This document shows, piece by piece, positions 1 to 26,978 of a DNA stretch of 27,620 nucleotides. Source of the stretch: Macrostomum lignano (taxonomy: Eukaryota); NCBI GenBank assembly GCA_002269645.1, contig NIVC01005055.1, forward strand, positions 1 to 27,620. The letters are read 5' to 3'. Below the pieces are notes generated by a model. That model was not told the origin of the DNA. It made no database searches and saw only the letters and a list, made by a program, of their open reading frames with translations. The stretch's first letter is position 1. Each line of letters starts with the position of its first letter. The translations under genes and the position numbers were made by a program.

Positions 1-26
1 GACTGAATTTCACGATCGGTCCTCGG

Positions 27-600: not shown

Positions 601-855
601 GTCAGCCGCTTAAACTCGGACAGCAGTTGCCGCTGCCTTCCGTCTCTGCCTTGTCCGGTGGTTGACTATCTCGCAAGCAGTTCGCCAGCTTCTGCATGCA
701 CCAATCCTCTGCCTGTGCTCGTCGAATCGCGCTGTCGTCATTGAACTCGACAGCGAGCGCAGAGCCACTGCACAGACAAGGTCCTTTTCGACACGGTCAC
801 CGACTGAGTGCGTCTACATTTCTATGTTTCTCGCCCTTGCGGTAGTCGAATTCGC

Positions 856-1985: not shown

Positions 1986-2078
1986 CTCTAAAACAGCTAG
2001 CTAGTTTGGCGGCGACAATCGGCGAGGAGGCACTCTGATGGGTTTCCCCGACCCGGTGTCAATTTTGTGGTCAAGTAG

Positions 2079-3666: not shown

Positions 3667-3782
3667 GTTGACAAAACTAGCTTGGGCTGAGTCACCGCCA
3701 TTGAAGGGCTTTCTGCACTGCCTTCCTTTTCAGTCATCAATGTAAGAACAAGCCAAGACGAAAATAGGCTTAAGGCGAAGAC

Positions 3783-4561
3783 CAGGGGTCGGCAACCTCC
3801 GGCCCGCGGGCCAGATCCGACCCGCAAAGACTTTCTATGCGGCCCGCGAACTTCCTTAATCTTAATTATTACAATCCGGCCCGCACTTTTATTGTAACTT
3901 CATTGTTTCTCCTACAAAAGTTTTGTGCACTAATAATGGGAAATTTCTTTCCTCAATTGCCAACTTTAATAACAAATTAGTTAACAATGAGACCCGAACT
4001 GATCGTGTAAGTGGCTGTTTACAAACTCTAGACAGACAGCACATCAGTTCAAACTTTCGAATATGGTATGGGGGGGGTAAAGGCCCAGGGGGGCAGATTT
4101 TGGAGGGTAAAGACCCAGGGGCGGATTCTGGAAGGTAAAGACCGACGGGGCCGATTCTGGAGGGTAAAGACCGGGGGTGGATTCTGGAGGGTAAAGACCG
4201 GGGGTGGATTCTGGAGGGTAAAGACCCATGGGGCAAATTTTGGAGGGTAAAGACCCATGGGGCAAATTTTGGAGGGTAAAGACCCAGGGGCGGATTCTGG
4301 AAGGTAAAGACCGACGGGCGGATTCTGATGGGTAAAGACCCAGGGGGCAAATTTTGGAGGGTAAAGACCCATGGGGCAAATTTTGGAGGTAAAGACCCAG
4401 AGGGCGGATTCTGGAGGGTAAAGACCCAGAGGGCAGATTTTTGAGGGTAAAGAAAGACCCAGGAGGGGGGGGGCGAAGTAATCGGGGGACGACCTGTGGC
4501 CCGTGGTCTTGAACTGAAAACCTCATCTGGCCCTCAAGTGGAAAAAGGTTGCCGACCCCTG
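3783..4561. mobile_element. Non-autonomous hAT-superfamily DNA transposon (779 bp)
   Basis: 16-bp perfect TIR caggggtcggcaacct / aggttgccgacccctg; 8-bp TSD gcgaagac / gcgtagac (7/8); subterminal ggcccg repeats; no transposase ORF. Confidence 0.9.
4070..4465 (+). repeat. G-rich minisatellite, ~31-32-bp unit (ggggcggattctggagggtaaagacc + variable), ~12 copies
   Basis: Direct reading; source of the repetitive ORFs at 3889-4604. Confidence 0.95.
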
Positions 4562-4581
4562 GCGTAGACCGACACTTGGCT

Positions 4582-4594
4582 GCCCAGGACGCCA
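4582..4594 (-). promoter_or_regulatory. Possible Gypsy primer-binding site (tRNA-Asn-like)
   Basis: Minus strand TGGCGTCCTGGGC resembles the complement of the eukaryotic tRNA-Asn 3' end (...CCCAGGGACGCCA) with a 1-nt gap; lies upstream of gag once the hAT is removed. No LTR-terminal CA next to it. Confidence 0.3.
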
Positions 4595-4729
4595 AGGCAC
4601 TCACTTATATATTATAATTGTAAAGCGAGCAAATATACATACGGGCTAGTAAACTTTCGCACCTGCAATCAACTAATCAAACCATCTTACACAACCAATA
4701 CGCTCATATATCTCGTTATCACAATGCAG

Positions 4730-6260: not shown

Positions 6261-7621
6261 ATGAGCAGAATGTCTCAACCATGGGTTTCACACTTGTTGC
6301 TAACAGTGCTGCTTCTCCTATGCCGATACGCCAGCGCCGTTAAACTCCACAAACCTCGGTCAGAAGTTCTCTCACTACTGGGCGAACAAGAAGGTAAGAC
6401 AATTCTTATTTACCGTATTTGTGGTGCTGTTTTGACACGAAAGAATTGATAAACTTGGCTGATATTCAGATGAAACTCTTGCCCAAGCCCTAACCCTTTA
6501 TTGGAGATTGGGTTAGTAAATTCAACACCTGTTCAAGCATTCTCCTCACTCTAAAATCTCGCATTCCCTTGTCACTAAATTACTTAAAATACTGGCTTAA
6601 ATTTACATTGAGACATGTTTATGCTACAATATTCTTAAACTATAGCATAAGCAGCAATAAAAACGCTCTTAAAAGTTAAAACCATAAATTTATCATACTA
6701 TGTCCAAGACTAAACATTGTCAAAACGTCATTAGTTCAGTTTCCAGAGGATATGACCACTTCAGAGATAGGAAATTTATTTAAATGCTGAATTTCTTGTA
6801 TTATATTTACATAATTTTTAAGTACATGCTTACTTCTTGCTAACAGTAAAACTATATAGTTAGCTACGTACTACAAGCTCGAAATTTAGCATTGTCAGTG
6901 GCGAAAACGACTAATAAGCCTTCCGACGATATTTGACATTTAAAGCTTTTAAAAGCCCCGAAAAAAACATGAAAAATCTCGCCACTACATTTCCTTCCAT
7001 CCACTCGAATCCGCATCAGGCCGACTGTACTTTGGCAACTGCGAGCAGAGCAGTGGACGGTCTTCGTGCGTCTTCGCCATAGACGAGAGCTACAATCAGG
7101 AGCCAACCCAGTGCGCCGTGACATCTCTGGAAGGCAAGCCCTGGTGGATGGGCGTCCTCGAGACGCCGGCGTATATAACTAAGATAACGCTGCTCAATAT
7201 CGATCAGCTGTATCGTTCTCACCCGGACGCCCTTCGCGCAGTAACCATTATGGCAGGTGATGACGTCTGCTTCCGCTACGAAAGCGACGAGTCTTTTGTT
7301 AAGCGTTCGTTTCCTTGCGACACCGTTGCGGACCAGATCGTCATCAGGAGCAGAATGGATTCAGCGGCTTTGACTCTGTGCGATGTCACAGTTTATGGCG
7401 CGCCAATTAGATTTCGGGGAGTTGTTGACGATGCTGGGTGAGCATTTAACTGACAAAATCAATACTTCTGTGTAAAAAACTTTTTGCCCTGAGAAAAACG
7501 AAAGAAGGAAATAAAGACGGTAATAAATAGCCAGAAAAGATTTATTTAAATGAACAAAAAACTGACATCAGGTGAGACAACTAAGAACAATCAGGATGGA
7601 TAGTGAGATCGAAACTAATAA

Positions 7622-7715
<94 letters not shown>

Positions 7716-7721
7716 CGTCAG

Positions 7722-7806
<85 letters not shown>

Positions 7807-7811
7807 CACAC

Positions 7812-7866
<55 letters not shown>

Positions 7867-7871
7867 CACAC

Positions 7872-7922
<51 letters not shown>

Positions 7923-8969
7923 CTAAGACAGACAACTCATTCCATAGCCATACGCTTTCCCGGCAGCCCTTTGCGAGTTCAGTGGTGCCAGCAGAGCAGT
8001 GTAAGCGGCAACGGCTACTGCGAGAACGCATTCGATGGCGATGCAAACAGCAACCACAATGCGCGTCCTTGTGCAGTCACCATAGACGAAGCAACGCCCT
8101 GGATGTCAGCCAGACTGGAAATTCCCTCTCTGGTGACTGAAATCAAAATTTTCAACCGAGCCGACTGTTGCGGCGATGGACTCAACCAATTTTTGCTGAC
8201 ACTTGATAATCGAGTCTGCGCGGATTACGAAGGTGCAACGTTCGAGTCGAAGTATTTCCCATGCAAGTTTTTCGGCGATCGGCTGCGCATTAAAAGCAAG
8301 AAAAATAGAGCCATTTCAGTCTGCGAGATGCAGGTCCTTGGCTACCCTATGGAACTTCCGCGAGATGCGAAATTCAGTAAGTTAGGATTCAAAGAAGATA
8401 ATGGGAAGTTAATCTCTAATAGTTCTCACAAAAAATTCACAAGAAAAACGTGTCTGCTCTATCCCACTGCTAACAAAGTGCCACTCCTCCCAGATTCTCA
8501 TTTACTGGGCCAGCCTCCCAGATCCTCAGTTGCTGGACCAGCCTCCCAGATCCTCAGTTGCTGGGCCAGCCAGCCTCCCAAATCCTCAGTCACTGGGCCA
8601 GCCTCCCAGCTCCTCAGTTGCTGAGGCCGGATTCTCAGATCCTCAGTTGCCAGCGATCCCAAATGCGCAACCAATATCTGTCTTTATCACAATGCAGAGG
8701 CCCTCGGCTGCTACAAAGATAACCACAAGGACCGTGACCTCGGTCAGCTGGTGTCCAGCATCCTCATGAGCCACGAGAAGTGCTATTCGATTTGCAAGCG
8801 ACTTGGCCTGAAATATTTCGGCGTCCAAGGCGGAGCGCACTGCTGGGGCGGATCGACCTACGGCAAGCACGGCAAGGTTGACGAAAAAAAGTGTTCCATA
8901 CCCTGCGAGGACAACGAGAGGCAGAGATGCGGTGGTTCAATATTCAACAATATTTTCGAGGTCCTATGA
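6261..8969 (+). CDS. Secreted protein: signal peptide, 2x FTP/F-type-lectin-like (F5/8C fold) domains, WSC domain; 410 aa
   Basis: Exons 6261-6393, 7020-7437, 7967-8376, 8698-8969; all GT-AG, phases 1/2/1 compatible, 1233 nt open. Hydrophobic leader [15 protein letters not shown]; [21 protein letters not shown] and [25 protein letters not shown]; WSC exon. Confidence 0.88.
7020..7437 (+). CDS. Exon 2: FTP/F-type-lectin-like domain 1 (no RxDCC motif)
   Basis: [15 protein letters not shown]...QCAVT...PWWMGVL...[10 protein letters not shown]. Confidence 0.85.
7622..7933 (+). repeat. (GACA)n microsatellite in intron 2
   Basis: ~75 GACA units with few interruptions. Confidence 0.98.
7967..8376 (+). 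CDS. Exon 3: FTP/F-type-lectin-like domain 2
   Basis: CQQSS...CENAFDG...PCAVT...PWMSARL...[12 protein letters not shown]...VCEMQVLG; donor A|gtaagt. Confidence 0.9.
8486..8652 (+). repeat. 28-bp minisatellite (cctcccagatcctcagttgctgggccag), ~6 copies, intron 3
   Basis: Direct reading. Confidence 0.9.
8698..8969 (+). CDS. Exon 4: WSC domain
   Basis: Same motifs as 4730-5001; phase-1 acceptor matches exon 3 donor. Confidence 0.9.
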
Positions 8970-10673: not shown

Positions 10674-13600
10674 TTACGTTACATACATGTCCTGGCTAGA
10701 ACAAGGCGGCCTGTCTTCTTCTGTTGAGTAATAAACTACAGGATCCTCAATCGCAGCTGCTGGTCTCGACTCCATTTTGAGTGCTTCAGCTGCCGCGTTG
10801 CTGCTTGCAGCTTTGCTTTGTCTGTTATGACGACATTTTTTGCAGTTACTCGCGGCTACACTGAGCAATGTTAAGATCAGAGCCAGACTGACAATCGCGA
10901 TCACAACCCATTGGACCAGAAACACCGGCATTCTCCACCAAGGAACGAGTCTGGCGCCTGCATTCAGATTTAATTAACATGCGATGTAATATTGTGGTAA
11001 GGCTCTCCTATTACTAATAAGCAAATAATAATTAATAGCTTCTTTAATCACTGCAAACCTATGCGCAAATGCGCATTATTAATCTGCGATTAGAACCAAT
11101 CTTTGTACATTGAGTTTTTTTAATGCACTGGAAATTATAATATTTAAAATACCGCGTAAATACAAGTATATATAACAAAGCTTCAATTTTCCTTTGAAGT
11201 GCATTAAAGCGAGCTAAAATGTCAATCGTATGAAGCTTCCAGTTTTAATTGCATGCATACAGCCCCATCCAAAAGATGAGATATTGACATTTGCATATGC
11301 TAAAAATGAGTTGTCTGTATGTATGTATCCAGGAGTATGCGATCGATTTTAGAAAAAACTTGCACCATTTGATCAGAAGTTTAGTGCTAAAAGTAAAAAA
11401 GAAGTCTAACACCAATTATTTTTAAACGAAATTGGGCCTTCAAATAAATTTTGGTAAATTCAAATAAAAGAGGTTGCATCCTCAGGCAACTGAACTCAAA
11501 GACTCACCGAACTTCGATTTTTGCGGCAGGTTCAGCTGTACAGTCAAGCTTCCATTTAGCTTTCGGCACTCGATAACTGATCCTGCTATGTCCGTTACGG
11601 GATGAACCACAACGGAGAAGTGTGACGTCACAGAACTGAGACACTGAGGGCCCACTGGATCGGAAACTACCTGAAATTTAAAGAGTTGCTATTGCAGCTG
11701 GTGATATTTTTGACAAGGAGAACTTTCCAAGTTATCACAATTTGCGTACCAATTGTATTAGCTGAGCAGCAATATTTGTGCTGTTGGTTGTCCTCAGCTT
11801 GCACCGGTGTCTCACTCTGGCACAAGCGGACGTGGACACAACACGGAACTGAGCTAACCCGGTACGAAGCCACAACTCAGGCTTTAGCAGGTCGATGCTC
11901 AAAGACTCCGGATCCACTGCAAGTACAATATGAGTTTTAAATAAATGGGAAAACTACTGACCCGTATAGTCAATGAGGAGGTTCAGTTGAACTTTACACT
12001 GAAAACTATCAAGATTCTGAACACTATCAGATTCATTGCGTGCATATTGCGACTAGGGGTTTCAACCTCTTGGGCGTGAATTATACAAGCTCTTGGTCTA
12101 ACTTCATTCAAGCATGCATTCATTATCGCTCCGCTACGATTCTAAGACTCATCATCAGAGACGGACGTCTTTAATACTCGTATATAGTAGTAAATCTTTT
12201 AATCATTTGAACGCTTACTTTGAGGCAAGTAAAGCGACTTTTTTAACTTGCTCAGACCGCCCGCTGAAAACTCGCAGGTGATACTACGAACGCACTGGTG
12301 GTCGAGTCTGCTGTGACGAAACTCAAAGGTAACCATGGTGTCGTTCCGTTGCCAATTTTCCTGGAATGATCAATCGTAACTTGCTTTCCAGAGTTTTTAT
12401 TATCTTATTCTCCTCCTAAAAATACCTGGTCCCACGCAAGTACGAGTATTATTCATAGAAGATAATTACCGATTGGGGATAAACTTGGATGAAACGGTTT
12501 CCACATTCCTTGTACAATCGACAAGTTGCTGATGTGTCTTTTGCAGCAGTTTGCAAAGCAACTTTAAACACTGAAGCGGACTTCTTGGACCATTGGTCTG
12601 CATCCCATATCACTTCGCTTGTCCCTGTGGAACAAACAGATAAAGACAACTGTAAAAAATGTAACTTCAAAACTATTTTTGAAAAGCGAATGCTTACAGT
12701 TCATCAAAGGCAAGTTACGTGACACAATGTTTCCATTCAATAGGTGGCACTCGATAACTAAACCATTGATGTCTGAGGGCTTAACGTTCACTGAGAATAG
12801 CGAAGTTACTGGACTAGTGCAGGCATGTGCACCTTTTGTTTGTTGTTCTACCTAAAGTTTCATCGTCATAATTAAATGCATGAAAATTGAACAACGGCCA
12901 AAAACTTATAAATTAGCGAAACATACCGAAGCTGCTAATGGAGCCGCGACAATCGAGCTATTACGACTTGATATTGACAGTTCGCATTTTCTCGGAACGG
13001 AGCAGCGACTTTCCGCTAATGTTCGAAATTGGACCGAGCCCTTTATTGGCCACTGGTCAGGCTGTAGTAGCTCAATCTGCAGTGAATCTGAAGATGCACT
13101 TTTTTAATAACTCAAATTAGAGTATGGTTCAGTGGAACTTCGTGTAAATATGAAAGTTGTTAACTCGATCAGTATGAATAATAGAGATTACAAAAATCTT
13201 TTTGGATTTTATTTTCACTATCGTTTGTTACAAAGAAAAAGCTCATTACGTTGCTAACACTGTGAAATGACTGTGACGATACCTTCCAGGCTGTGTTGTT
13301 CCTCCTGATGAGTTTTTTCCCAAACGACAGTCGCCAGAGCAATCATAGAGATTCGTAACATATTTGGATGCTGCGGGGAGCACTACTGTTGAATTTTTGA
13401 TCGGATTCAACACCACCACAAGCTAAATGTGTTGAAAGCCCTGTACATCAAACAGTTAAAGCCTACCCGAAATGTACAACTGACAGAAGGGGGCTAGTAC
13501 ATTTTTAGACCATTCTACGGCTACTTAAACCTGTTTTAAAACTCTTGGCCCGTACTTTCATTTTATTACCGTCCCATTACAAAAACTGTCACATGACGAT

Positions 13601-14961
13601 GCTGCAAGTTACAGCGAAACATGTTGGGAATACAAATAAAATATTTTCGTCATAATATCAATTTTATAGGATGCAAATCTTTGCAATAATCTTCTTGTTT
13701 TTAGCATTTCTTAAGCAAAGTAGCAGTCCTAAAATTTAAAGTGAATTGAAGTATCAATTTGCCCCATAAAATTTGGCACTCGTTCATTCGTAAAATTCTG
13801 CGCACTAACCAAAACCATTCTGCTTTACCTACAGCGCTGGCGGTTAGCAGCCCCCATTTTTGCAAACCAAGCTTTTGCTGATGGAAAAAAACGTTACAAA
13901 ATGGTATAAAACTTACCAATAGAAGAACTGTCTTCAACGCAGAATTGAAACTGAAACCCGGGCCTCACGACATATTCATCTGTTTTCAACGCAAGCGTCA
14001 CGCTTCCAGTGAAATTCAGCACATTGTTGGCGACCTTGTCATGTTTTCCGGTTAAATTCAATAGTGAAGCGGAACCAATATCAGACACCAAACCTTTGTA
14101 TATCTGCAATATGTCGTTGCCGGCCTCTAAATGAAACGAATTAAAATAAATTCGAACAATTTGAAACTCCTCGGCATGAATACTCCAAGCCTTGATCAGC
14201 TGATTGGTGTAGTTTCTTGAACCGAATTCCGGATGACTCGTTCGTATTCCCCAGATTTCTCTGATAATTTCTACGGGTATATCTGTCCAATTGTTTGGTA
14301 GGAAAAATATTTGGGTTGTATAATTGTCATGAAAAAAATAAAAAAAATTTTATTTACTTCTTTCTGTTATCAATCCCTGCAAACGAACATTGAACGGAGC
14401 GGAAGATTCATAATGAAACCGGAAACCCGATTTCCACTTGTCACCTTTGATAGAACATCTCAGCAGAGCTGGTGCGGACACCCAGTATTCCGACAGTGAA
14501 TAAGCATTTCTTAAAATTTGAAAATTTTCTACCGGACTAAATAATTTTTTTATATTTCCATACACGTGAACAGTGCGACAGACGATGTCAACCGTAGAAA
14601 ATGAGATTTTTATCGATAAGCCGGCACCTGGATTTAAAAGCCAGCAGTGATCGAAGCTGTTTGCTAGCTTTGCATTGTAGTCGATTGCAGCAGGACTAAG
14701 TGTGACGCTTCCGTGCATTTCAGTTAAATTAGACGGTGCTCTGCAGTTTCCTGGAGTTTTAGCTGAAAGTTTGAAAGCATTTTTGGATGTTTAAAAATCG
14801 ACGAAATGGCGGAGTGCGCGCCTCTCATTGCCGATAGGTTAACGTCGGCAACAGCACTTCGTTTGGATCACTGTAATAAAAAACTCACCCGCTAGTAACT
14901 TGATTCCATGGTTTATAACAAAAAGAAGGCAGACAGCCTTCAGGTTCGCTGTTAGCAACAT
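10674..14961 (-). CDS. Gene A: type I membrane protein, SP-CUB-CUB-3x novel ~105-aa repeat (a-b-a)-TM-Tyr-containing tail; 689 aa
   Basis: Exons 14961-14889, 14762-14358, 14282-13917, 13087-12927, 12851-12698, 12624-12470, 12360-12219, 11916-11750, 11670-11508, 10957-10674; all GT-AG, phases compatible, 2070 nt open; four introns 73-79 nt. CUB motifs HCWLL and NY..W.I..F..F.LE..D.L.IY..TD...GF; TM VFLVQWVVIAIVSLALILTLLSVAA. Confidence 0.85.
13300..13645 (+). mobile_element. Penelope-like element 3' remnant (GIY-YIG C-terminus, pLTR fragment) in gene A intron 3
   Basis: 13399-13497 reads DRIQHHHKLNVLKALYIKQLKPTRNVQLTEGG*, matching the PLE endonuclease tail pattern KL.ILEAL.I...KP.LN.Q; followed by a hammerhead-like motif and AATAAA. 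Left boundary approximate. Confidence 0.75.
13587..13630 (+). ncRNA. Degenerate minimal type I hammerhead ribozyme motif
   Basis: (A)TGACGA-T-GCTG caagtta CAGC-GAAA-CATGTT; palindromic AACATGTT helix III; C3 is A and stem I pairs poorly. Confidence 0.6.
13917..14762 (-). CDS. Gene A exons 2-3: CUB1 (14762-14358) and CUB2 (14282-13917)
   Basis: CUB2: NYTNQLIKAWSI...FNSFHLEAGNDILQIY...TDEYVVRPGFQFQF. Confidence 0.88.
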
Positions 14962-17720
14962 TTTGGTTAAGAGCTAATAATTGCCTTTGTGGTGCGCGAA
15001 CGGTTTCTGAGATAGCTTTGAATTTTAAGATAGATTGAACTCTTTTATTCACTTGATATAAACAAACGCTTAATACAGTTCCACAATCATCTGCGATCTC
15101 TTTTCCACTGAAAAGTTATCTTTGGATTAAGTCGATGTTAAAATTGACTGTCAGAGTTAACAGCGTGTGAAGCAGTATAGTCGATAACATGGCTCACTTA
15201 TTGTAAACAGGTCTCTTTCTGGGTCACATCTGGAATTTTTAGTGCCCAATCGTGTTTAATTTTATACTGAAGGCAAGTTGGTTTATTGGTTGTCTTGAGT
15301 ACTTTTCAAAACAATATTTGCGGACAGTATTTAAAATACGCTATGAGGTATTTTTATACTCGTAGCACATTATTATGATGAGTAAAATTTATATCTCAGC
15401 ATCCAACTGTGGAAAAGCATGTCTAAATTTAGTGATTTTTGTAAAAAAAATGGCATAGTTTCCATCAGTAATAGTATACGCCTATTCTTGATAAGCATGG
15501 TTATTCAATATTAGAGGCAGGAGCTTTAGGAACTTTAGCCGCATTGTCACACAAACGGCGTCAGGCATTATTGTCCATTCCGCCGACTCCCCTGAGCAGA
15601 CACACAAGCGCGCGGATACGTACGCAGTCATACGCACAGGCACACACTCACACAAGGTGTACAGTGGCGCTAATTTTATTTATCGTTAGGCATGTACACT
15701 TCACTGTGCCTTGGGGGTTGGCCCTCAAGAGCATTAATTGCACGAGCAGAGCTAAGCCGAGATGATCCAAAGTAATGTGACTGCATTTGGAATCGAGCCT
15801 AGGCCGCTAACAAAAAAGAGCGCTGCACCGCCCTGTATGCTCAGGATATCTACTAGATCTAGGTTTAAATCAGAATGAATATGCTTTTTTCATCTTAAAT
15901 GAAGGCTGACTAAAAGGTTTGAGTCTCCGTCGGTGTTAGAGTATTATCAACATGTTAACCCTGTCATCATTTTGGCCTGAAAGCTTGTAGCCTAAAAATC
16001 ACTTATAAATTTATTGTAACTTTGATCGAAACAGTAGTTTTTTTTTTAAATCTAAGTCTGTTTCAAGATGTTGTGGTGTGATAGGCCTCTTGGCTCTCTG
16101 TTAATAATTATACTGCTGTTACCAAATTGTTGTAGGGGTCGGGGTTTATTAACTTTATTCTGTTGCTGATACTAGATTATTACAGGGGATTTCGGGGGGT
16201 TCTTTAGAATTTAGGGAGAAAATATGCAAATATCACTACTAGAAGGAGTATGCTTTAAAGTTACTCCTGGCAGCGTGAGTGTCCGAGCGGCAAGACACTG
16301 TCTATATAAACTAATCCGAATAGGGCTACGCAATGGATTAGAGTTTCCTGGGAAACGCACTAATGGGGAATTTCAATATTTAATAGGGAATGCTGACATT
16401 AGGTAAGGGATGGGCCTAATGGGGAAGGAGTATAGGGGAAGAGGATTTGTCTAAATTTAAAAACTTGGGATAAGTCGCTAGGAGCGCGCAGGGACTGGGC
16501 GGCCTTTGCGTTAGGGGAAGGGGAAGGGGAGGCTTGAATGCACACACAACTGGGGGAGAGGGGTCGAGGGGAGCACAGTTCTTTCAACTAGGGGGGAGGG
16601 GAAGTGTTCGCTGGGAGGGGAGAAGCGGTCGGCGCTTCAAGGGAATAGAGGGGTTATTTATTGGGGAAAGAAAGGAAGACTGAAAGCTGAATCACTTCTA
16701 TTTTTAGAACAAACTGTTCATACTCCAGACTCAGCTAGGAGCAATCGCCAGAAGAGCATGCAAGAAGAAGAAGTTTATTTGCGCGTATATATACTAATTT
16801 TACTAAATATGGCGGACAATTTTAAACAAAAATACGTAAAAGAATTTATTAGCAGAAAAGTTACAGTATAAAATCAGTTATTTATTTACGTATACTTACT
16901 TCTGATAATGCTAAAATTAATAATGACAGGAAAAATGAATTTACGTAAAAAACGAGAAAAGCTAATGTATTAAGTCAACTTGGTTACTAGTAAAGCAAAA
17001 ATGAACGACAAAATATCAAGGCTTAAAAAACAGAGTTTATAAAAATAGCGCTGGCACATGAGCATGCGAGTTAATTCGATAATTTTATTTTGAGTTAGTA
17101 TTTATTTTTAGGTAAAATTATTGCGCGTGAAAAGCGGAATAGAAACAAAAGCCAATAACAACATCATCAAAGGAATATCTAAGGAATAATAACAAAAAAT
17201 TAAACCTTTACCGCATATCTATATTTACGTAAAGTATACTTTTGACGGTCCAACTAGCAGTCTAAATATTGTATTTTATAATAAAAACGTAGCTTACCAC
17301 TCAATGTTATTTGTGACGAAATAATCGTTGCGCGTAAAATTTCTTCTCAGTAGTGCAGTCTACCTGATTTGGGACCTTATTGAAATAATCAGTGCGTATT
17401 GATCACTTTAATTTCCAATCATGCAGTAATTGATGTCACCCGGAATATAATTATGCAATTACTCTACACACTCTACACAAAATCTGAATTTCACAGGAGA
17501 ACTTTAATTCTCTTTAAATGGCAGTCTCACATGGCCTCACGAAAACGTACACTTCATTTTGCGATAGCAGTTACGACGGATAAATGAAACCATGGACAAT
17601 TCTAAATAACTTTTGCAAGCCGAGTTTGCCCCACAGGGATTTTTGACAGTCTTTGAGTATATGGCCAGTTGCAGGTCCAAAGACTGCGTCGTAACTTTAC
17701 CAGGCTTGTCATTTGTGTTG

Positions 17721-17831
17721 TTAATCGTGACAAGTTTTTTTCCCAAGCGACAGCCCAGACCAATTATAGGGATTTGTAACATATTTGGAAGGCACTGGCA
17801 GTTTCCACACTCCTAATCCATATTTGAATGG
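17721..17831 (-). CDS. Possible terminal cytoplasmic-tail exon of gene B (only if the 18216-18221 frameshift is an error or polymorphism)
   Basis: Acceptor cactaacag|, phase 0 matches donor TGT|gtaagt at 18093; PFKYGLGVWKLPVPSKYVTNPYNW...*; KYVT echoes gene A MYVT. Confidence 0.35.
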   Translation of the reverse strand, partial: PFKYGLGVWKLPVPSKYVTNPYNWSGLSLGKKTCHD

Positions 17832-18194
17832 CTGTTAGTGGCAAAAAGTTTTAATGGCATCTTTCTTATTATCGGTAGCTAAAATAGTTTTCCATAGTAT
17901 TTTTACAAAACAACAAATACATTCTGTAATTGTAGGTGAAGGTTTTAATTAGGTTAGGATTTCGACCAGCCGTTTAAGCAACATAGATTTCCCTGTCCTC
18001 TATCTAGAATGACAATGATTGATTAGTACTTTGTGAGCTATGTAAATCTGTGTTTGAGAAAATAATTGTAAAAATTAATTGCACATAACTTACACAATCT
18101 TGTTCACCGTAATCTTGATTGCAAATAGCAACAGAGGCAGATGTAGCTAGCTGCTGCATCACGAGTTCAGTTGACGGATTTTGCTGACCTCTGC

Positions 18195-21100
18195 TCATTT
18201 TGACGAGTTTCGAGCAAAAAAGAAAGCTGCAACCAGGACAGAAACGACAGTTGCTACTGCTAAACCAATCAGTGCCGGTCGCTCCCACACTGTAGCGAGC
18301 CTGCCATCTGCAGTTATATTAATTTTAGCTACAAGCTTTTTGCCTGTGTTGCTGCAGACATTTCAGTAATTCATTCGGCTTTATTTACAATCATCATTAG
18401 TTGGTCGAAGGGTCGCTTTCACGAGGTCAAAATTTTTCATGGTAGATTTTTTCACGTTTTTTACGTCTCAAGCTCGTAGAAGTGACTCGCAATACTTTTT
18501 ACGATTTCAAAATTAGAGTTTATGAAGTTTTGACTTCATAAAGTGATCGAACTTTCTGATTTCGACAACATAAAATATCGAGCTTATGAAAGTCCACAAG
18601 TTCATGTGTTTAGATTCAGAACCGCACTGAAGCCATGATAATGAATCCAACCTGTTTGCGATAATTAAGTAATTAAAACTCACCTAAATTTAGCGGCGAC
18701 AGCTTTAGCACAAAAGAATCGTTGACTAGCTTACAGATAATAACTGATCCTGCCAAAGCTGATGGCTGAGTGATCGCTACAAACTGTGACTTTATTGTAC
18801 TGAAGCAACGAGGACCTTTTGGATTTGCTATAGTCTATAATAGAAGCACGTTTATGTAAACTAAAGTTTTAAAAGTAAAGCGAAATTTGAATATCTACAT
18901 AATATGCCAGCACAAACCATTTTCGTTCGACGGGCAGTGATGATTGCGGCACCGACAGTCTTTACTCTGCACCGGTGTCGTACATTAGCACAGGTAGATT
19001 CAGAAACTACTTTGAATTGAAGCATTCCGGACAGAGGCCACAGATCAGGCTTTAGTAACTCAATTTTTACGGACTCTGGATCAACTTCAGTGATTTCAGT
19101 AGCGTTTATTAGTATAGTTTGATTTTGAGTGTGACAACAAGGATACATTCTGATCTTTAAAGCGGATCACCATAATAGAAGCATCCTAGCTAAGATATAT
19201 AAACCTCTGTCCTATTTTTTTGCCATTGGTCCTTGCGGCTAGCATTCTGTCATTGCTTTTTAATAGTACATGGAATATTGTACCAAATATTATTCGTGTT
19301 GATGCATTTCATATGTTACACAGTTAATATAATAATATCGCAATTTCAATCCAACATGAATTAAATCAACAGAGTTCCTGCAATCCTAAAAGTTAAAATA
19401 AATTGGGAAACTAAAGAAGTTAATGAATATTCCTGAATATCTATGAATATTTATTTCGCTTGCCATCGGTTCCTTTTCTGGAAATACGCATTTTTTTCTT
19501 CAAAAATTATGCAAAATAACAACACATGAAATACTATAAATACTAACTTAATTTTTGCACTCAAATCTATTATAGCTTGTTACAATGAAACTTGTGCAAA
19601 ATTAAGAATTGTCGTTGGAATACAATGAAAGCAACTTACCAGCAGGAAGCGGATGGGAGATGATTAATTTCGACAGTCCAGAAGCAGAAAACTGACAGGT
19701 GACATTTTTGAAGCAGGCGATCATTTTCGAACCAGTTTTGCGAAAATGGAAAGCAGTCTTGAATAAATTCGAAGTGTTCAAATTAATCACCTGAAAAGTC
19801 GAATTTTAGCATGAAAAAGTGCATGTTTATGAAAACTTTTTTTCGAAATATCAATTATCGGAGTGCCGGAGTGTTGCATCTTTCAATATATATCATAAAT
19901 ATATAAAGTTCTATCAATATTCAGGATTATAAATGCTTTACCTTTAGTACTATGTGAAAGAATTATCAAGGGAAATATTTATATTGCTAGCAATTCTTTA
20001 AAATTTGTAAGCAAGCTCGAAAACAACACTAATAAGTTTAACTAGACGTGATACAATTAAAGTTGCTGTGTAGTAGTATTTTAGAAAACTATATTCCTAA
20101 TTTATTTACAAGCTATTTATAAAAAATATGTCAGGGACTACTCGAACATGTTTCGAACTCAAAAACATGTTTGAGTAGTCCCTGAAATATGTATTTTCGT
20201 GATACGCTCGTAAATTCATGTTCGAACATCGGGATTGCTCAAATGGCTGTTGCTGCTGCCTTTACCTTGATCGATCAAGGTAAAAAATTATATACGCTAA
20301 TATACTACTGCAAAGCAGCTGCATAATCTTCTATCCGTTGGCTTGTTTAAGGTAACGCCTTCTGTAAATGTACGCATGTAATTAAAACTCATTCGTTTTC
20401 ATCTAGTTAAAAACTCTTAAGACTTCTGCTACACAACGCGGTTATCCCTGGTATAGTACATGTATGTGCTGCACACCTTTACTAAATAAGGTCCCAGTTC
20501 GAAGCTGGAACTGTTGCATTCGCTCCACAAATTACACCTTGCTTGTACGGAGAAGTTAATTGCTGGGTATAGCGAAACACTGAATTCTAGACCAAAGTGA
20601 TTAGACTGGTCAGAAAAGTGCCATCCAACTTCGTAAGCCCCTATAAAAAATAAAGAGGAATTTTATGCAACATTAATCGTATTTAAACCCTGCTGAAGGT
20701 AAAGCTGTACGTACATTTCGTTGACCGAAGCGCTGTCGATTCGTAACCGCCGTTCCGCAATTGGCACATGATTGTTGAGCCTGCCCAGACCGTGGGATGG
20801 GCAGCCACAGCAAATACCGACGTCACTGAGCTGAGGCACTGAGTACCAGCTGACTCTTTTGCAGACTAAAACAATTAGAGAATCGAGGCTTTCATTAAAA
20901 CCTGGCGTTATTAATAGCAAAAACGAGTTTCACTGACAAGGCTGAATTTCGTAGCAGTGTACTTCATTCCACTGGAGGTCTTTAGACTGCACCGGTGCCT
21001 AATGCGCGAACAGGCCGGCTCAGACACAGCACGAAAATGAACGACTCCCGTTAGGGGCCACAGCTCTGGTTGCAGTGGCTCAATATGTACTGATGTTGGG

Positions 21101-23585
21101 TCGGCTGAAAAATAGAATTGCACTTGTGTAATTGAAAGTTCCACTCAGTGGTGATTAGGGTATTCATATTTCTAACGGTGAAATTATTCATGGTAAACTA
21201 ATTTATTTGAAATGTTATTTTTACCTATACATTACCACATATTGTGAAATAAAATGCTTAGTTGATAAGATAACAAACTTCTTACGGACGGGCGGGGTGA
21301 TTGTCGTATCGCCAGGTAGTCCAGAAAATTGGCAATTTATAGTAGCGATGCATAATACGGCCAAATTCTGATGCATATCAATCAATGTGTGAATTAATTT
21401 AAAGTCATGAGAATGGTGCGCTTGCTGAAATAATCAAGAAAACACTCTACCAACTGAATAAGTATATTAGCAATTTTTTAAAATGAACATAATTGTTTTA
21501 TAACTAACGTGCGCGACGACCACACTTTGATTGCAAACTGGGTGCAGAATGCACTTTCTAATGTGGCCCATGTCACTGTGCCAAATTGAAAAATATCGAT
21601 GAGCCGTTTCGTCAGTATGGAGATAAAATAAAGTCGACACTTCGCTGTTTCTGCAAGCTGCAAAAACAAACTTTAATTGAACCAGCTTAAGCAGATTTTC
21701 GATTGTTTTTAGCAATAAATTTACTTTCCTTACAAGAACTAGGAAGGTCAGAAACACAGAATTGAAATTTGAATCCGGATTTGACCACTGAACCGTCCGT
21801 TCGGAACACAAGAGTCACACTGCCAGTGAATGTTGTCTGTACTCCATTGTGGTCACCACCCGTTAGGTTAAACAGAGACATATTACCAATGCTTGGTACG
21901 ACGCCCTGAAATACTTGCAGCATGTCATATCCTTTTTCAGTGCGGAATGAGGCGAAATTTATCCAGACCGATTGTAAGTTCTTGGCCTGAATGCTCCAAG
22001 CTACTCTCAAATTGTTCGAATACTTTTGCGCTCGAAAGTCGGGATGACTGTATCGTTCTCCACTAATAGCTTTTATCATTTCTGTGGCAGGATCTGCATT
22101 TTATATGGACATACATGTATTAGAATAGTTGCAGTAAATGACGATTTTTAGCGATTTTTCAGTGTTACTTTTGTTTACATCACATTAAATAATTGCTATA
22201 GGGCAGATAGCTAGTTAAATGTGATTTTACCTAATTGTAGTAGTGCAGGCTTGGGAATTGTTAGGGGTTATGATAGACAAGGGAGTTTGGGAGTTTTTTT
22301 ACCAGTATAGAGCAGTTGGGCTCTAGAAAAGGAAGTCATGTAGCTCATCTCGGGACTTAGAAAAACAGAAGCAACTGGAGCTTAGGGTCAGCTAAGATTA
22401 AGCGAGTTAAGACCAGGGAATTAGGATTGGGAATACATAAAACTACTATCAGTAGTTTTCGCTAGTAACAGCACACTATGGTAGTCATTATGTTGCACTC
22501 GGGAACTAATAATGCCTTGCAACTAATTGCATATCACTTTTCTAATTATAATCTTTCGAATTATAATAACAATTATGGATTCCTGTCTTAATTATTTAGT
22601 CTTACATAATGAGAATTAAGAACAGCAGAGAACCTGGCTGGTGGCAGCAAATACCAATTCAAGCCAGTATCCACTAAGAACCAAAACGAGTAAAATAACA
22701 AGTAGCCTAGACCGGGCAAGCCACGGCGAAGTTTTCTTTTGTGCCGATAAGTTTATACAAATGTAGTTGACTAGACAGGGAGGGAATGATTATCCAAATT
22801 TCGGTGGCACTTGTCAATAAAATTATACACGGATTCGATGTGAAAGTGAAAAACTTCAAGGACAGATGAGTATAATCAAATTTGAACTTTCTGAAAATAC
22901 AGCACTATGAAGAGCTATATTATGTCAATATAAATATTTCCATAGATTTTCCCACAAAACAAAAAACGAATGCATTCAGCAACTAAGACTGCGTAAAAAA
23001 CTTACTGACATAATAACTGTCTCCCATAAAACTTGCACCAAACGTGGCCCTGTGCTTGTATCGAAAACTGAAACCCACGTTCCATCCCACGCCGTTGCTT
23101 TTGCATCGTAGTAGAACAGGGCCAGCGAGCCAGAACTCTGAGAGAGACGATTTTCCAGACGACAAACGGAACCTCTCTGTAGCATTACTTGGCGATTCCG
23201 ATCTTTCGTACAAGTGAACTGTGCGGCAAATGCTCAAATATATAAAAAGGGTGAACTGTATCTCAACTGCATTGTTAGTGCTGAGCAGCCAACAGTGATC
23301 AACATTGACACTAGGTCCTCGGTAGTTTACATTCGAGGAATTAGCCTGGACAATACCTTCTGGTTCGCTTAGAATTGTATTTATTGAGCATGAAGCTGGT
23401 TTTTCGTGTGAAAAGTAGATTAAGTAAAATAGGTAGAATATTAAATTTACGTAGAAAATTTTAAATGGTTGCACACCTGTTTATTTCTTGTTTTATAGAG
23501 CTTGTGAGAAGAACTTACCTCCAAAACTATCAGTGCTTAGTAGTAAAACCAAAAAAATTTTCCAATCCAGTTGTAACCGTACCAT
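18195..23585 (-). CDS. Gene B: paralogue, SP-CUB-CUB-4x novel repeat (b-a-b-a)-TM-RNSSK*; 720 aa as sequenced
   Basis: Exons 23585-23519, 23395-23006, 22093-21734, 21657-21509, 21424-21286, 21104-20938, 20865-20715, 20640-20483, 19790-19640, 19084-18918, 18834-18684, 18307-18195; GT-AG, phases compatible, 2163 nt open; each aligns with a gene A exon. Acceptor at 19085 is a weak AAG; exon 8 donor could instead be 20477. TM ALIGLAVATVVSVLVAAFFFA. Confidence 0.82.
20132..20184. mobile_element. 53-bp TIR-only hAT-like miniature element
   Basis: 22-bp TIRs cagggactactc(g/a)aacatgttt (21/22), 9-bp spacer, perfect 8-bp TSD aaatatgt. Confidence 0.85.
20261..20284. repeat. 24-bp perfect palindrome tttaccttgatcgatcaaggtaaa
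   Basis: Direct reading, no loop. Confidence 0.9.
21734..23395 (-). CDS. Gene B exons 2-3: CUB1 (23395-23006) and CUB2 (22093-21734)
   Basis: DHCWLL...ICRTVHLY...LLRC...GFSFRY; KYSNNLRVAWSI...FASFRTEKGYDMLQVF...FRTDGSVVKSGFKFQF. Confidence 0.88.
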
Positions 23586-25460: not shown

Positions 25461-26978
25461 TCAGCATGCACTCTTCCAAATCGTTGTAGCTGAAGTAGAC
25501 GCTCCGCCTTCGGTTGAGTGCCTCGACGGCTGTTGTGTCAGTGGTACAGATACAGATGCTGAGGCTAAGCCAACACCGCTGCTATTCTTCTGTCGTCGAC
25601 TTCCAAGAAGTCTGCGACCAGCCGCCGCGGAGACCGTTTCTGCATCTTCCTCTTCAGAACTGTCGTCCAAAGCTCTATTAGTGAAGCTGAGTCGATGCTG
25701 CAATGGAGGTGCCTGAGCTGGGGAAATATCACGTCGGAGATGCACTCCTCGACGAGGGTGCTGCGGCTGTTGCTGCATAGTCGAGGGAGGTGGCGGAGGC
25801 GGAGGCGGCGGTAGTGCCCTGGCGGGCTGGAAGAATATTGAATCGTCATCTTCCTCCTCAACGCAGACGTCGTATCGACCACCATGCGAGCCAGATGCCC
25901 GATCATCTTCATCTTCTTCGGCTTCGAAATCGTCTTCCTCTTCGTCGTCCAGATCGATTAGCCGTCGGGCAGGGGGCGGAGGCGGACTAGGCACCGATGC
26001 TATTCGGAACTCCATCGGTTCGCCACCATATTTACTCGCAACCCCTCCATGCTGATTCTTAAAATAGTTCTCCTCGTTGCACTCGCCGCACTCGTTTTCG
26101 TGGATCTGGGCGTGGGTGACGCGACGGACACCTGAGCTAATAAAAGAACTAGGCGGCGATCGTTGACGACTTTGCTGATTGCGTCGTCGGTTGTGTCGTG
26201 GGCGACCAAGGCTCGGATCTGCAGAGGACTCAGGGCGGACCGGCGAGGTTGGCGACTCGGCATGCGATTGTGTGCGGACGAGCTCGATGTCCGGTGCCGA
26301 TTGCGGACCATGTTGCGGGCCGATGCTCTGAGTCAGGTAGCGATATGTGACTCGCTTGGGCACGCGTGGACCCAGGTCGCTGTAGTTTCGAGTTAACGAC
26401 TTCTTCTGCTGCTTGGACTGACAGTCCTGGAGGATGGAGCGAAGGCCAGCAAGGCCGGAAGATTTTTGGGTCTGTTGCGGGGTTTGAGACGGCTGCGTAT
26501 CACTATCGACACTGCCACCGCCCGAGGAGCTGAGAAGAGGGCGCGCACTACTGCTGCTAATATTTCCGCCGCCACCACCTCCATGGTCACCGCCTCCGTT
26601 GTCGTCGTCGCCACCTCCACCGCCGCCTTCACTTCCAGCTGCACCACCACCTTCACCGTCATCTTCTCCTTCGTCAGCGTCATTCAGGGCGGCAACAGGG
26701 ACACCTTCGATGCCGCAGAACATAGCTCGCCTGTCCTCCTTGTACATGTCAATGAGAAGCTCGAGCTTTCGTTCAATGTCTTCCACCTGGTTATCAGAAG
26801 ATCAAATGTGTTAAACTATTATTTTTTCAATTAACTTTGAGTGCTAATCAATCCCAAAAAGTATATTTTCAATCTACTTACGGATCTCTCTACTTTAACG
26901 ATTCGTGAAGCTAGGCTGACTTTACTCTCGTAAACATCTTTGTCTTTGCTTCCCTGACGGCCCAGAATTTGGTCGAGC
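25461..26978 (-). CDS. KCNQ: KCNQ (Kv7) voltage-gated K+ channel, last two coding exons (26978-26882, 26786-25461)
   Basis: (R)LDQILGRQGSKDKDVYESKVSLASRIVKVERS|VEDIERKLELLIDMYKEDRR = end of helix C plus helix D, closely matching protostome KCNQ; GT-AG sites in phase. Upstream exons lie beyond the window. Confidence 0.93.

What the first reader, a model, noticed from the sequence alone, without database searches (positions are those of the whole stretch)
10674..23585. Tandem receptor family: CUB-CUB plus an unassigned ~105-aa two-subtype repeat built by exon-pair duplication
Seen: two paralogous genes whose ectodomains repeat a module always split into a phase 1-0 and a phase 0-1 exon. Subtype a: DP.S..I..L.P..W...G..F...S...C.R.R..C | ...C.S.VTS.F.V...P....G..I.C..NG (first-half exon 167 nt in three of four copies). 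Subtype b: W..EV.W...F.V.L...C.L..EC | ...F.F...C...(I/V)TC.FS..GL...LP. Gene A is a-b-a, gene B is b-a-b-a, so a two-domain unit has been duplicated or lost. Each module has two Cys pairs (C-X5/6-C spacing), unlike canonical Ig spacing. Inference: beta-sandwich (perhaps very divergent Ig C2-like) stalk under CUB ligand-binding domains; a lineage-specific, diversifying cell-surface recognition family I do not recognise.
Basis: partly seen in the sequence, partly recalled or inferred. Interest (0 to 1): 0.8.

Follow-up and report, generated by a model that had tools for sequence, protein, structure and literature searches.

The report
Flatworm CUB plus Ig-like receptor gene pair
Two neighbouring genes encode single-pass membrane proteins with two CUB domains on a stalk of very divergent immunoglobulin-like domains; this uncharacterised family was otherwise found only in the flatworm Macrostomum lignano, and it is real but only modestly surprising.

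Summary
On the minus strand lie two intact, tandem paralogous genes, A (14961-10674, 689 aa) and B (23585-18195, 722 aa). Both read signal peptide, CUB, CUB, alternating ~100-aa modules (A: a-b-a; B: b-a-b-a), then a transmembrane helix. Every module is two exons with phases 1-0 and 0-1, and all junctions are GT-AG.

The a and b modules match no Pfam family and no PDB sequence. AlphaFold2 models of a b-a unit fold as two beta-sandwiches. Foldseek matches them to two-domain immunoglobulin chains (E about 1e-6, probability 1.00).

An exhaustive HMMER search of 1.84 billion proteins found only 10 relatives, all from Macrostomum lignano. They are named only "CUB domain-containing protein" or hypothetical. 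They share the architecture, the eight conserved cysteines, the intron positions, the 167-nt exon, a juxtamembrane VWERP motif, a C-terminal YVT motif and a tandem arrangement.

The b-a pair is the ancestral unit, present one to two times. So this is a flatworm-restricted, uncharacterised CUB plus Ig-like type I membrane protein family. "Diversifying recognition" is untested, and the a module is in fact well conserved. The function proposed here is inferred: Ca2+-dependent ligand binding by CUB2 and tyrosine-motif signalling.

The parts
14889..14961 (-). Gene A exon 1: ATG and signal peptide (MLLTANLKAVCLLFVINHGIKLLA), ends in phase 1
   Evidence: Read directly; gene model; donor GTGAGT
14358..14762 (-). 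Gene A exon 2: first CUB domain, degenerate (phase 1-1)
   Evidence: No Pfam hit. Homologous to CUB1 of M. lignano P0001 and P0011 (5e-12 and 9e-7); the M. lignano CUB1 does pass Pfam CUB (P0014). The family profile matches the ADGRG6 CUB and neuropilin-2 a1.
13917..14282 (-). Gene A exon 3: second CUB domain (phase 1-1); keeps the acidic E..D..D motif
   Evidence: Pfam PF00431 at 2.6e-6, 28.2 bits against a cut-off of 21.4. Best PDB sequence match is enteropeptidase CUB2 at 1.3e-6.
12927..13087 (-). Gene A module a1, first-half exon (161 nt, phase 1-0)
12698..12851 (-). Gene A module a1, second-half exon (154 nt, phase 0-1)
12470..12624 (-). Gene A module b1, first-half exon (155 nt, phase 1-0); the leading Trp codon is split T|GG
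12219..12360 (-). Gene A module b1, second-half exon (142 nt, phase 0-1)
11750..11916 (-). Gene A module a2, first-half exon (167 nt, phase 1-0)
   Evidence: 49% identical to a2 of P0001 (1e-29).
11508..11670 (-). Gene A module a2, second-half exon (163 nt, phase 0-1)
   Evidence: Modelled in AF2 model m62b850c2a7de, where the a domain has pLDDT 72-88.
10674..10957 (-). Gene A last exon: juxtamembrane motif RLVPWWRMP, transmembrane helix, 56-aa cytoplasmic tail ending DMYVT, stop codon
   Evidence: The motifs are shared with M. lignano P0001, P0011 and P0014.
23519..23585 (-). Gene B exon 1: ATG and signal peptide (MVRLQLDWKIFLVLLLSTDSFG)
23006..23395 (-). Gene B exon 2: first CUB domain, degenerate (phase 1-1)
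   Evidence: 33% identical to gene A CUB1 (2e-25). BLASTP 4e-14 and 2e-11 to CUB1 of P0001 and P0014.
21734..22093 (-). Gene B exon 3: second CUB domain (phase 1-1)
   Evidence: Pfam PF00431 at 5.6e-8, 33.5 bits. 50% identical to gene A CUB2.
21509..21657 (-). Gene B module b1, first-half exon (149 nt); very divergent b copy
   Evidence: Keeps C-x5-C.
21286..21424 (-). Gene B module b1, second-half exon (139 nt)
   Evidence: Keeps C-x5-C and QFSG.
20938..21104 (-). Gene B module a1, first-half exon (167 nt)
20715..20865 (-). Gene B module a1, second-half exon (151 nt)
20477..20640 (-). Gene B module b2, first-half exon (164 nt)
19640..19790 (-). Gene B module b2, second-half exon (151 nt)
18918..19084 (-). 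Gene B module a2, first-half exon (167 nt). The acceptor (cactgaag|TT) has a weak pyrimidine tract.
   Evidence: It is the only acceptor that keeps the frame and the conserved 167-nt length.
18684..18834 (-). Gene B module a2, second-half exon (151 nt)
18195..18307 (-). Gene B last exon as modelled: juxtamembrane RLATVWERP, transmembrane helix, stop codon 6 aa after the helix
   Evidence: The next reading frame continues with a tail that resembles the P0001 tail.

Best explanation
The region holds two tandemly duplicated, apparently functional genes. They belong to a small family of type I single-pass membrane glycoproteins that, as far as can be detected, exists only in macrostomid flatworms.

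Each protein has these parts, from the N terminus:
- a signal peptide;
- a membrane-distal pair of CUB domains;
- a stalk of two alternating, sequence-orphan Ig-like beta-sandwich domains, b and a, each stapled by two conserved disulfides in a non-canonical pattern;
- a conserved juxtamembrane motif (RL..VWERP);
- one transmembrane helix;
- in gene A, a short cytoplasmic tail ending in a conserved acidic-x-Y-V-T motif.

The evolutionary unit is the four-exon b-a pair, which the model predicts as a rigid two-domain rod. Family members carry one pair (P0014, P0011), two pairs (gene B, P0001) or one and a half (gene A, which has lost the first b).

Shown: the gene structures, the domain content, the Ig-like fold prediction, the conservation and the taxonomic restriction.

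Inferred mechanism: the stalk holds the CUB pair away from the membrane. CUB2 keeps the Glu/Asp/Asp and Tyr positions of Ca2+-binding CUB domains. As in cubilin, C1r/C1s, MASPs and neuropilin, it would bind a protein ligand through a basic side chain in a Ca2+-dependent way. The C-terminal tyrosine motif would then recruit a cytoplasmic partner. Gene B as assembled lacks that tail, so it would act as a non-signalling partner or decoy.
For: - Gene models: closed reading frames, GT-AG introns and regular phases.
- CUB domains: Pfam hits on CUB2. CUB1 is homologous to M. lignano CUB1, which passes Pfam. The CUB1-CUB2 family profile hits cubilin at 2.5e-20 and PCPE-1 at 7.5e-11. It also hits neuropilin-2 across both CUBs, and the ADGRG6 CUB. 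Gene A CUB2 aligns to enteropeptidase CUB2 with the same short LE...D loop and a TD..GF motif.
- Fold of a and b: the AF2 model of the window's A_b1-a2 has pLDDT 67.7, with the a domain at 72-88. The model of the M. lignano b-a unit has pLDDT 86.3 and pTM 0.78. Foldseek against PDB gives 1851 and 1071 hits at E<=1e-3. The top hits are two-domain Ig chains aligned over 200-250 columns with probability 1.00.
- Family and restriction: 10 hits in 1.84e9 proteins, best 2e-80, all M. lignano. Two further profile searches of 5.8e9 clusters found only M. lignano proteins.
- Conservation: the eight cysteines. Intron positions and the 167-nt exon in M. lignano loci. A tandem family neighbour 5.3 kb downstream of P0001. 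The VWERP and YVT motifs, read from the sequences.
- Glycoprotein: 9-11 N-x-S/T sites per protein.
Against: - No transcript evidence for the window's junctions. One acceptor (gene B a2, 19084) is weak.
- No Pfam Ig, FN3 or other family matches a or b even at E<=10. No PDB sequence matches either. The Ig assignment therefore rests on predicted structure only.
- The better model is of the M. lignano homologue, not of the window protein. The window b domain was modelled at only pLDDT 45-65 and without its split-codon Trp.
- Model coordinates could not be read, so the disulfide pairings and the sheet topology are not verified.
- The window's CUB1 domains have lost the acidic positions and fail Pfam.
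- Ligand, Ca2+ dependence, signalling and tissue of expression are all untested.
- Gene B's tail is truncated, or frameshifted in the assembly.
Confidence: 0.62

Rival explanations
1. The a and b modules are fibronectin type III or cytokine-receptor-like modules rather than Ig-type domains. A two-subtype pair with conserved cysteine pairs resembles a cytokine-binding homology region. The proteins would then be cytokine-receptor-like.
For: Two alternating subtypes form a fixed pair, and the cysteines lie on neighbouring strands rather than in the canonical B-F position (DSSP strings; alignment). Foldseek cannot cleanly separate Ig and FN3 sandwiches, and only the top 50 hits were visible.
Against: All 100 visible Foldseek hits are immunoglobulin C/V-type pairs and none is an FN3 or cytokine receptor. 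There is no WSxWS motif in any member (sequences). No fn3 or cytokine-receptor Pfam hit appears at E<=10. UniRef labels one member (P0010) an Ig-like domain protein.
Confidence: 0.1
2. The proteins are structural adhesion or matrix-anchoring molecules (cell-cell or cell-cuticle glue) rather than signalling receptors. The stalk and the CUBs would mediate homophilic or matrix binding, and the short tail would serve only in trafficking.
For: The tails are short and poorly conserved apart from the last few residues. Gene B has almost no tail. The ectodomain is rod-like and glycosylated. CUB and Ig-like domains are both common in adhesion proteins (general knowledge).
Against: The C-terminal acidic-x-Y-V-T motif and the juxtamembrane VWERP motif are conserved between species even though the rest of the tail is not. 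That argues for a specific cytoplasmic or membrane-proximal interaction.
Confidence: 0.2
3. This is a rapidly diversifying self/non-self or reproductive recognition family. Copy number and domain number vary, and a long-tailed and a tail-less member form a paired-receptor arrangement.
For: Tandem paralogues exist in two species. The number of b-a units and of CUBs varies. The b module and CUB1 evolve fast, at 26-33% identity between species. The family is lineage restricted.
Against: The family is small: about four to five distinct genes in polyploid M. lignano and two in this window. The a module and CUB2 are well conserved (38-49%). There are no polymorphism or dN/dS data. Gene B's transmembrane helix carries no charged residue of the kind activating paired receptors use.
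Confidence: 0.12
4. One or both loci are decaying pseudogenes or artefacts of my hand-built models.
For: Gene B stops 6 aa after the transmembrane helix, while the next frame carries a tail that resembles the P0001 tail. B_b1 is highly divergent. The window's CUB1 domains fail Pfam. A decayed LTR retrotransposon lies nearby.
Against: There are 22 exons without a single internal stop, and every splice site is canonical. All structural cysteines are retained in every module, including B_b1. The exon structure is identical to annotated M. lignano genes.
Confidence: 0.06

Closest known systems
Macrostomum lignano 'CUB domain-containing protein' / hypothetical proteins: PAA76314.1 (BOX15_Mlig014562g1), PAA75150.1 (Mlig034133g1), PAA86082.1 (Mlig019335g1), UniRef A0A1I8HM97
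   Same: True homologues (2e-80 to 1e-10). They share the order signal peptide, CUB, CUB, (b-a)n, transmembrane helix. They also share the eight cysteines, the intron positions, the 167-nt exon, the VWERP and YVT motifs and the tandem arrangement.
   Different: Only 26-49% identical per domain, so they come from a different species. Unit numbers differ: one b-a in P0014, four CUBs in P0011. Gene A's a-b-a order is not seen among them. None has been characterised.
Neuropilin-1/2 (CUB-CUB-FA58C-FA58C-MAM-TM, short tail with a C-terminal motif)
   Same: Type I membrane protein with an N-terminal CUB pair on a stalk, and a short tail whose last residues are the conserved functional element. The family CUB1-CUB2 profile aligns across both neuropilin-2 CUBs (6.5e-5).
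   Different: The stalk is made of discoidin and MAM domains, not Ig-like domains. The C-terminal motif is a PDZ ligand (SEA), not a tyrosine motif. The sequence relation is only generic CUB similarity.
Ca2+-binding CUB domains of cubilin, PCPE-1, enteropeptidase, C1r/C1s and MASPs
   Same: These are the best PDB sequence matches to the CUB pair (cubilin 2.5e-20, PCPE-1 7.5e-11, enteropeptidase 1.3e-6). CUB2 keeps Tyr, Glu, Asp and Asp at the motif positions (F.hLE...D.l.iy and TD....GF).
   Different: Those proteins are secreted or have other architectures. Ca2+ binding here is inferred from motif alignment only. CUB1 of the window genes has lost the acidic residues.
Immunoglobulin-fold domains (C1/C2-type pairs such as IgG Fc CH2-CH3 and Fab light chains)
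   Same: The predicted b-a unit superposes as two sandwiches on these chains (Foldseek E 1e-6 to 1e-5, probability 1.00). Ig-type exon logic applies: the modules are bounded by phase-1 introns.
   Different: No sequence-level match to any Ig Pfam family or PDB chain. The cysteines are not in the canonical B-strand and F-strand positions with a strand-C Trp. Each domain has two disulfide-forming pairs. Each domain is split by a phase-0 intron.
CDCP1 / NETO / DCBLD-type CUB-containing single-pass receptors
   Same: General logic of CUB ectodomain receptors with short tails. In CDCP1 and DCBLD2 the tails carry tyrosine motifs (from general knowledge, not tested here).
   Different: They have no Ig-like b/a stalk. 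No specific sequence similarity was detected in any search.

Membership tests
CUB domain (Pfam PF00431) | Score above the Pfam gathering threshold for the second CUB | tested here: met
   Gene A 28.2 bits and gene B 33.5 bits against a cut-off of 21.4
CUB domain (Pfam PF00431) | First module is also a CUB | tested here: met
   The window copies fail Pfam directly. They are homologous (5e-12 to 4e-14) to M. lignano CUB1, which passes Pfam (P0014 residues 33-141). The family profile matches the ADGRG6 CUB at positions 3-116 and neuropilin-2 a1.
Ca2+-binding CUB subtype | Tyr, Glu, Asp and Asp at the Ca2+-site positions | tested here: inconclusive
   CUB2 has NY..., hLE, ND and TD at positions that align to enteropeptidase CUB2 and to the C1s motif recalled from memory. 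CUB1 lacks them. No structural or metal-binding test was possible.
Immunoglobulin superfamily (Pfam clan Ig) | Sequence match to an Ig-family profile | tested here: not met
   No Ig, I-set, V-set or C2-set hit at E<=10 for window or M. lignano proteins. No PDB sequence hit with 8- and 9-sequence profiles. UniRef calls only P0010 'Ig-like domain-containing'.
Immunoglobulin-like beta-sandwich fold | Two-sheet sandwich of 7-9 strands that superposes on Ig domains | tested here: met
   AF2 models with pLDDT 67.7 and 86.3, all-beta with 7-9 strands per domain. Foldseek top hits are Ig pairs with probability 1.00. These are predictions, not experiment.
Immunoglobulin superfamily | Canonical B-F disulfide with a strand-C tryptophan | tested here: inconclusive
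   By the DSSP strings, b's two C-x5-C pairs sit on two long strands (residues 37-44 and 82-93 of model 2). Those strands are not the pair expected for a B-F disulfide. The four cysteines of a sit at the end of B, the start of C, the start of E and the end of F. Coordinates were not readable, so the pairings are unverified.
Class I/II cytokine receptor homology module (FN3 pair) | WSxWS motif or an fn3 profile match | tested here: not met
   No WSxWS in any member. No fn3 Pfam hit.
Zona pellucida module (CUB-CUB-ZP proteins such as CUZD1) | ZP-N/ZP-C profile match | tested here: not met
   No Zona_pellucida Pfam hit at E<=10. The Foldseek top hits are classical Ig pairs.
Macrostomid CUB-CUB-(b-a)n family (unnamed) | Full-length homology, shared exon structure and shared motifs with the M. 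lignano members | tested here: met

The most novel reading that the evidence does not exclude
The a and b modules are two previously undescribed Ig-like domain families whose canonical B-F disulfide has been replaced by pairs of staples between neighbouring strands. Locked together as a rigid b-a rod, they are the duplicating unit of a macrostomid-specific surface receptor system. In that system a tyrosine-motif signalling member (gene A type) and a tail-less member (gene B as assembled) work as a pair, for example in the fast-evolving reproductive or tissue-recognition biology of these hermaphroditic flatworms.
Probability: 0.15. Interest if true: 0.55.

Novelty: new variant of a known kind. 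Interest (0 to 1): 0.33.

Why it matters
The result defines a clade-restricted receptor-like family that is currently annotated only as "CUB domain-containing" or "hypothetical". It also defines two domain types, a and b, that no Pfam model or PDB sequence matched in the searches run here. Both could become new domain families, and would improve flatworm genome annotation.

It is a clean example of module evolution: a four-exon, two-domain unit with symmetric phases that has been duplicated or lost. It is also an example of Ig-like sandwiches that appear to have re-engineered their disulfide pattern.

Macrostomum lignano is a transgenic and RNAi-tractable model, so the function is directly testable. 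The finding does not bear on a long-standing open question, and the building blocks (CUB, Ig-like, single transmembrane helix) are ordinary.

Tried and rejected
- Word-indexed homology search with full-length gene A: no hit.
- Pfam on all modules and on both full proteins at E<=10: only CUB, plus one chance hit to an adenovirus fibre head at E 0.03.
- PDB sequence profiles of a and b, shallow and deeper: only chance hits with E>0.5.
- hhalign of a against b: probability 16%, so no demonstrable common origin.
- Rfam on the window: nothing.
- Search for extra a or b exons, or a lost b, in gene A's long intron: nothing.
- Domain trees to decide orthology of the a1/a2 and b1/b2 copies: unresolved, with unreliable bootstrap values.
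- Gene B tail against the tails of gene A and P0001 by BLASTP: silent. A Smith-Waterman shuffle test gave z=3.9 for the shifted frame against P0001 only.
- Search for a terminal YVT mini-exon downstream of gene B: none.
- Exact-sequence look-ups to identify the source organism: not on record.
- Literature searches for the M. lignano gene identifiers and for Macrostomum plus CUB: nothing relevant.
I therefore submitted versions tiled from exact exon translations. These drop the split-codon Trp of b, or replace M/P by the contiguous V/A at a linker.
- ZP module, cytokine receptor and CDCP1-like readings were considered and rejected (see the membership tests).

Full report
**1. What is in the sequence**

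Three-frame translation of the minus strand between 10.5 and 23.8 kb shows a regular series of open segments. I read the DNA at each boundary and assembled two gene models.

Gene A runs from 14961 to 10674, with 10 exons and 689 aa. Gene B runs from 23585 to 18195, with 12 exons and 722 aa. All introns are GT-AG and both coding sequences close in frame.

Both proteins begin with a hydrophobic signal peptide exon. Two single-exon domains of about 120-135 aa follow, each bounded by phase-1 introns. Next come modules of about 100 aa, each encoded by an exon pair with phases 1-0 and 0-1. The last exon holds a hydrophobic transmembrane helix.

The module order is a-b-a in gene A and b-a-b-a in gene B. 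The first-half exon of a is 161, 167, 167 and 167 nt. The finding's coordinates are exact: they are the first base of gene B's ATG and the last base of gene A's stop codon.

**2. Is the repeat more than chance?**

BLASTP among the modules gives 35-49% identity and E values of 1e-16 to 3e-33 for the four a copies. A_b1 and B_b2 are 33% identical (6e-11). B_b1 gives only a weak match.

Even B_b1 keeps both C-x5-C pairs and the CQFSG motif. tblastn of all modules against the window found no further copies and no relic of a lost b in gene A's 830-nt intron after CUB2.

**3. The CUB head**

Pfam recognises the second domain of both genes as CUB, above the gathering threshold. The first domain fails Pfam in the window. 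It is nevertheless homologous to the first domain of the M. lignano relatives, and that domain does pass Pfam.

A profile of the CUB1-CUB2 region from five family members matches the following:
- cubilin (2.5e-20);
- PCPE-1;
- enteropeptidase;
- neuropilin-1 and neuropilin-2, the latter in one stretch across both CUBs;
- the ADGRG6 CUB, over the CUB1 part.

Gene A's CUB2 aligns best to enteropeptidase CUB2. It shares the short LE...D loop and the TD....GF motif. By motif, CUB2 therefore keeps the Tyr/Glu/Asp/Asp positions of Ca2+-binding CUB domains. That assignment rests on my recollection of the C1s numbering, so it is an inference. The window's CUB1 has lost these residues.

**4. What a and b are**

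Neither module matches any Pfam family at E<=10. Neither matches any PDB chain sequence, whether with profiles of the window copies or with deeper profiles that add M. lignano copies. Profile-profile comparison of a against b is not significant.

I therefore modelled A_b1-a2 without the split-codon Trp. That model has mean pLDDT 67.7, with the a domain at 72-88 and the b domain at 45-65, and is all-beta.

A second model used the homologous b-a unit of M. lignano P0007, with the Trp present and a 10-row family alignment. It reached pLDDT 86.3 and pTM 0.78. The high pTM for a two-domain construct suggests a fixed b-a interface.

Foldseek against PDB gave more than 1000 hits at E<=1e-3 for each model. 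The visible top 50 in each search are all two-domain immunoglobulin chains: Fab light chains, IgG Fc CH2-CH3 and TCR chains. They have E values of 1e-6 to 1e-5 and probability 1.00, and they align over essentially the whole query. The TM-scores of 0.31-0.41 reflect different interdomain angles.

So a and b are Ig-like beta-sandwiches by prediction.

The cysteines do not follow the classical B-F pattern. From the DSSP strings, b's two C-x5-C pairs lie on two long strands whose spacing would allow an antiparallel two-rung ladder. The four cysteines of a lie at the end of B, the start of C, the start of E and the end of F, all at one pole of the domain. I could not read coordinates, so these pairings are inference.

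**5. Relatives**

The word-indexed search with gene A found nothing. The exhaustive HMMER search with an a-b-a profile against 1.84 billion representative proteins found 10 proteins at E<=1e-3, with the best at 2e-80. All ten are from Macrostomum lignano. They are named "hypothetical protein", "CUB domain-containing protein" or, in one case, "Ig-like domain-containing protein". Further profile searches added only M. lignano proteins.

The full-length members have these architectures:

| Protein | Architecture | C terminus |
|---|---|---|
| P0001 | SP, CUB, CUB, b-a-b-a, TM | GVYVT |
| P0014 | SP, CUB, CUB, b-a, TM | EVYVTLPN |
| P0011 | SP, four CUBs, b-a, TM | EVYLN |

Gene A ends in DMYVT. 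All members share a motif, RL..VWE(R/L)P, immediately before the transmembrane helix.

The eight cysteines of a b-a unit are invariant or nearly so across both species.

Mapping P0007 and P0001 onto their genomic loci shows the same split of every b and a into two exons. It also shows split codons between modules and a 167-nt first a exon.

In the P0001 locus a P0011-like gene lies 5.3 kb downstream on the same strand. The tandem arrangement is therefore shared too.

Per-domain identity between the window and M. lignano is as follows:

| Domain | Identity |
|---|---|
| a | 31-49% (43-49% for the best-conserved copies) |
| CUB2 | 32-43% |
| CUB1 | about 27-34% |
| b | 26-33% |

The window therefore comes from another species, most plausibly a macrostomid flatworm. 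That is an inference: its sequences are not on record.

**6. Interpretation**

The best-supported reading is a small, flatworm-restricted family of type I membrane glycoproteins with 9-11 N-glycosylation sequons. The CUB pair sits on a rod of b-a Ig-like units, and the four-exon b-a pair is the unit of gain and loss. Gene A's a-b-a is best explained by loss of the first b.

The mechanism is inferred:
- Ca2+-dependent ligand capture by CUB2, as in other Ca2+-binding CUB domains;
- a possibly degenerate or accessory CUB1;
- signalling or sorting through the conserved C-terminal tyrosine motif.

Gene B as assembled ends 6 aa after the helix. The next reading frame encodes a tail whose similarity to the P0001 tail is modest but better than chance (z=3.9, 1 of 500 shuffles). 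This points to either a homopolymer error or a real frameshift.

I weigh four rival readings in the rival explanations: an FN3 or cytokine-receptor-like fold, a purely adhesive role, a diversifying recognition role, and pseudogenes. None is favoured by the data.

**7. Novelty and score**

The claim of diversification is untested and partly contradicted by the conservation of a.

Homologues already sit in public databases but are uncharacterised, and I found no paper on them. The building blocks are familiar. The combination is new: a CUB pair plus two orphan Ig-like domain types with unusual disulfides, restricted to one flatworm lineage. I rate it a new variant of a known kind, of moderate-to-low general interest (0.33).

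Noticed in passing
window 18195-18240 (minus strand), and the next reading frame down to about 18007: Gene B's reading frame stops 6 aa after the transmembrane helix, just after a T-run (GCTTTCTTTTTTGCTCG). The next frame continues for about 70 aa (CSKLVKMSRGQQNPSTELVMQQLATSASVAICNQDYGEQDC, followed by a perfect GTAAGT). It resembles the P0001 tail (NQYYGE against NQDYGE; Smith-Waterman z=3.9, p about 0.002), although BLASTP is silent. This is either a one-base homopolymer error in the assembly or a real frameshift that makes a tail-less paralogue. No terminal YVT mini-exon was found downstream.
   Followed up: partly
window 1-3700, minus strand: A decayed Ty3/gypsy-type LTR retrotransposon. 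Gag, aspartyl protease, reverse transcriptase, RNase H and integrase zinc-finger pieces lie in several broken frames (Pfam hits; ORFs).
   Followed up: partly
window 7118-7441 and 7971-8624, plus strand: Two open exons carry a galactose-binding-like / F-type-lectin-like signature (PWxxxx[19 protein letters not shown]). Pfam F5_F8_type_C_2 scores 3.9e-5, just below its cut-off. This is probably a separate lectin-domain gene on the opposite strand.
   Followed up: partly
window 7580-8050: A long (GACA/CTGT)n-type microsatellite translates as TDRQ or SVCL repeats in several frames. It lies between the two lectin-like exons.
   Followed up: no
window 3890-4600, minus strand: A tandem degenerate repeat encodes a proline-rich ~10-aa periodicity (LPSRI.P.G / FTLQNLP.GS) in overlapping frames. 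GC skew shifts sharply at 4-5 kb. It may be part of the retroelement's flank or a satellite.
   Followed up: no
window 25461-26786, minus strand: A 441-aa open frame is rich in Gly, Asp, Glu and Pro low-complexity tracts. It sits in a 45-54% GC block, has no Pfam hit and is not on record as a called gene. It is probably a large exon of an unrelated neighbouring gene.
   Followed up: partly
window 16400-16700: A strongly strand-asymmetric stretch (GC skew +0.33 for 16001-17000) lies in the intergenic region between genes B and A. It translates into P/S/L-rich frames.
   Followed up: no
L002 19600-23600 (M. lignano NIVC01000829.1): A P0011-like family member with four CUB domains, 88-94% identical to P0011, lies about 5.3 kb downstream of P0001 on the same strand. 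No gene was called at this position in the listing for this locus.
   Followed up: partly
L001 8940-10135 (M. lignano NIVC01004028.1): The annotated gene for P0007 starts inside CUB2. The signal peptide, CUB1 and the start of CUB2 of a P0014-like protein lie just upstream of the annotated start. P0007 is therefore an N-terminally truncated gene model.
   Followed up: partly
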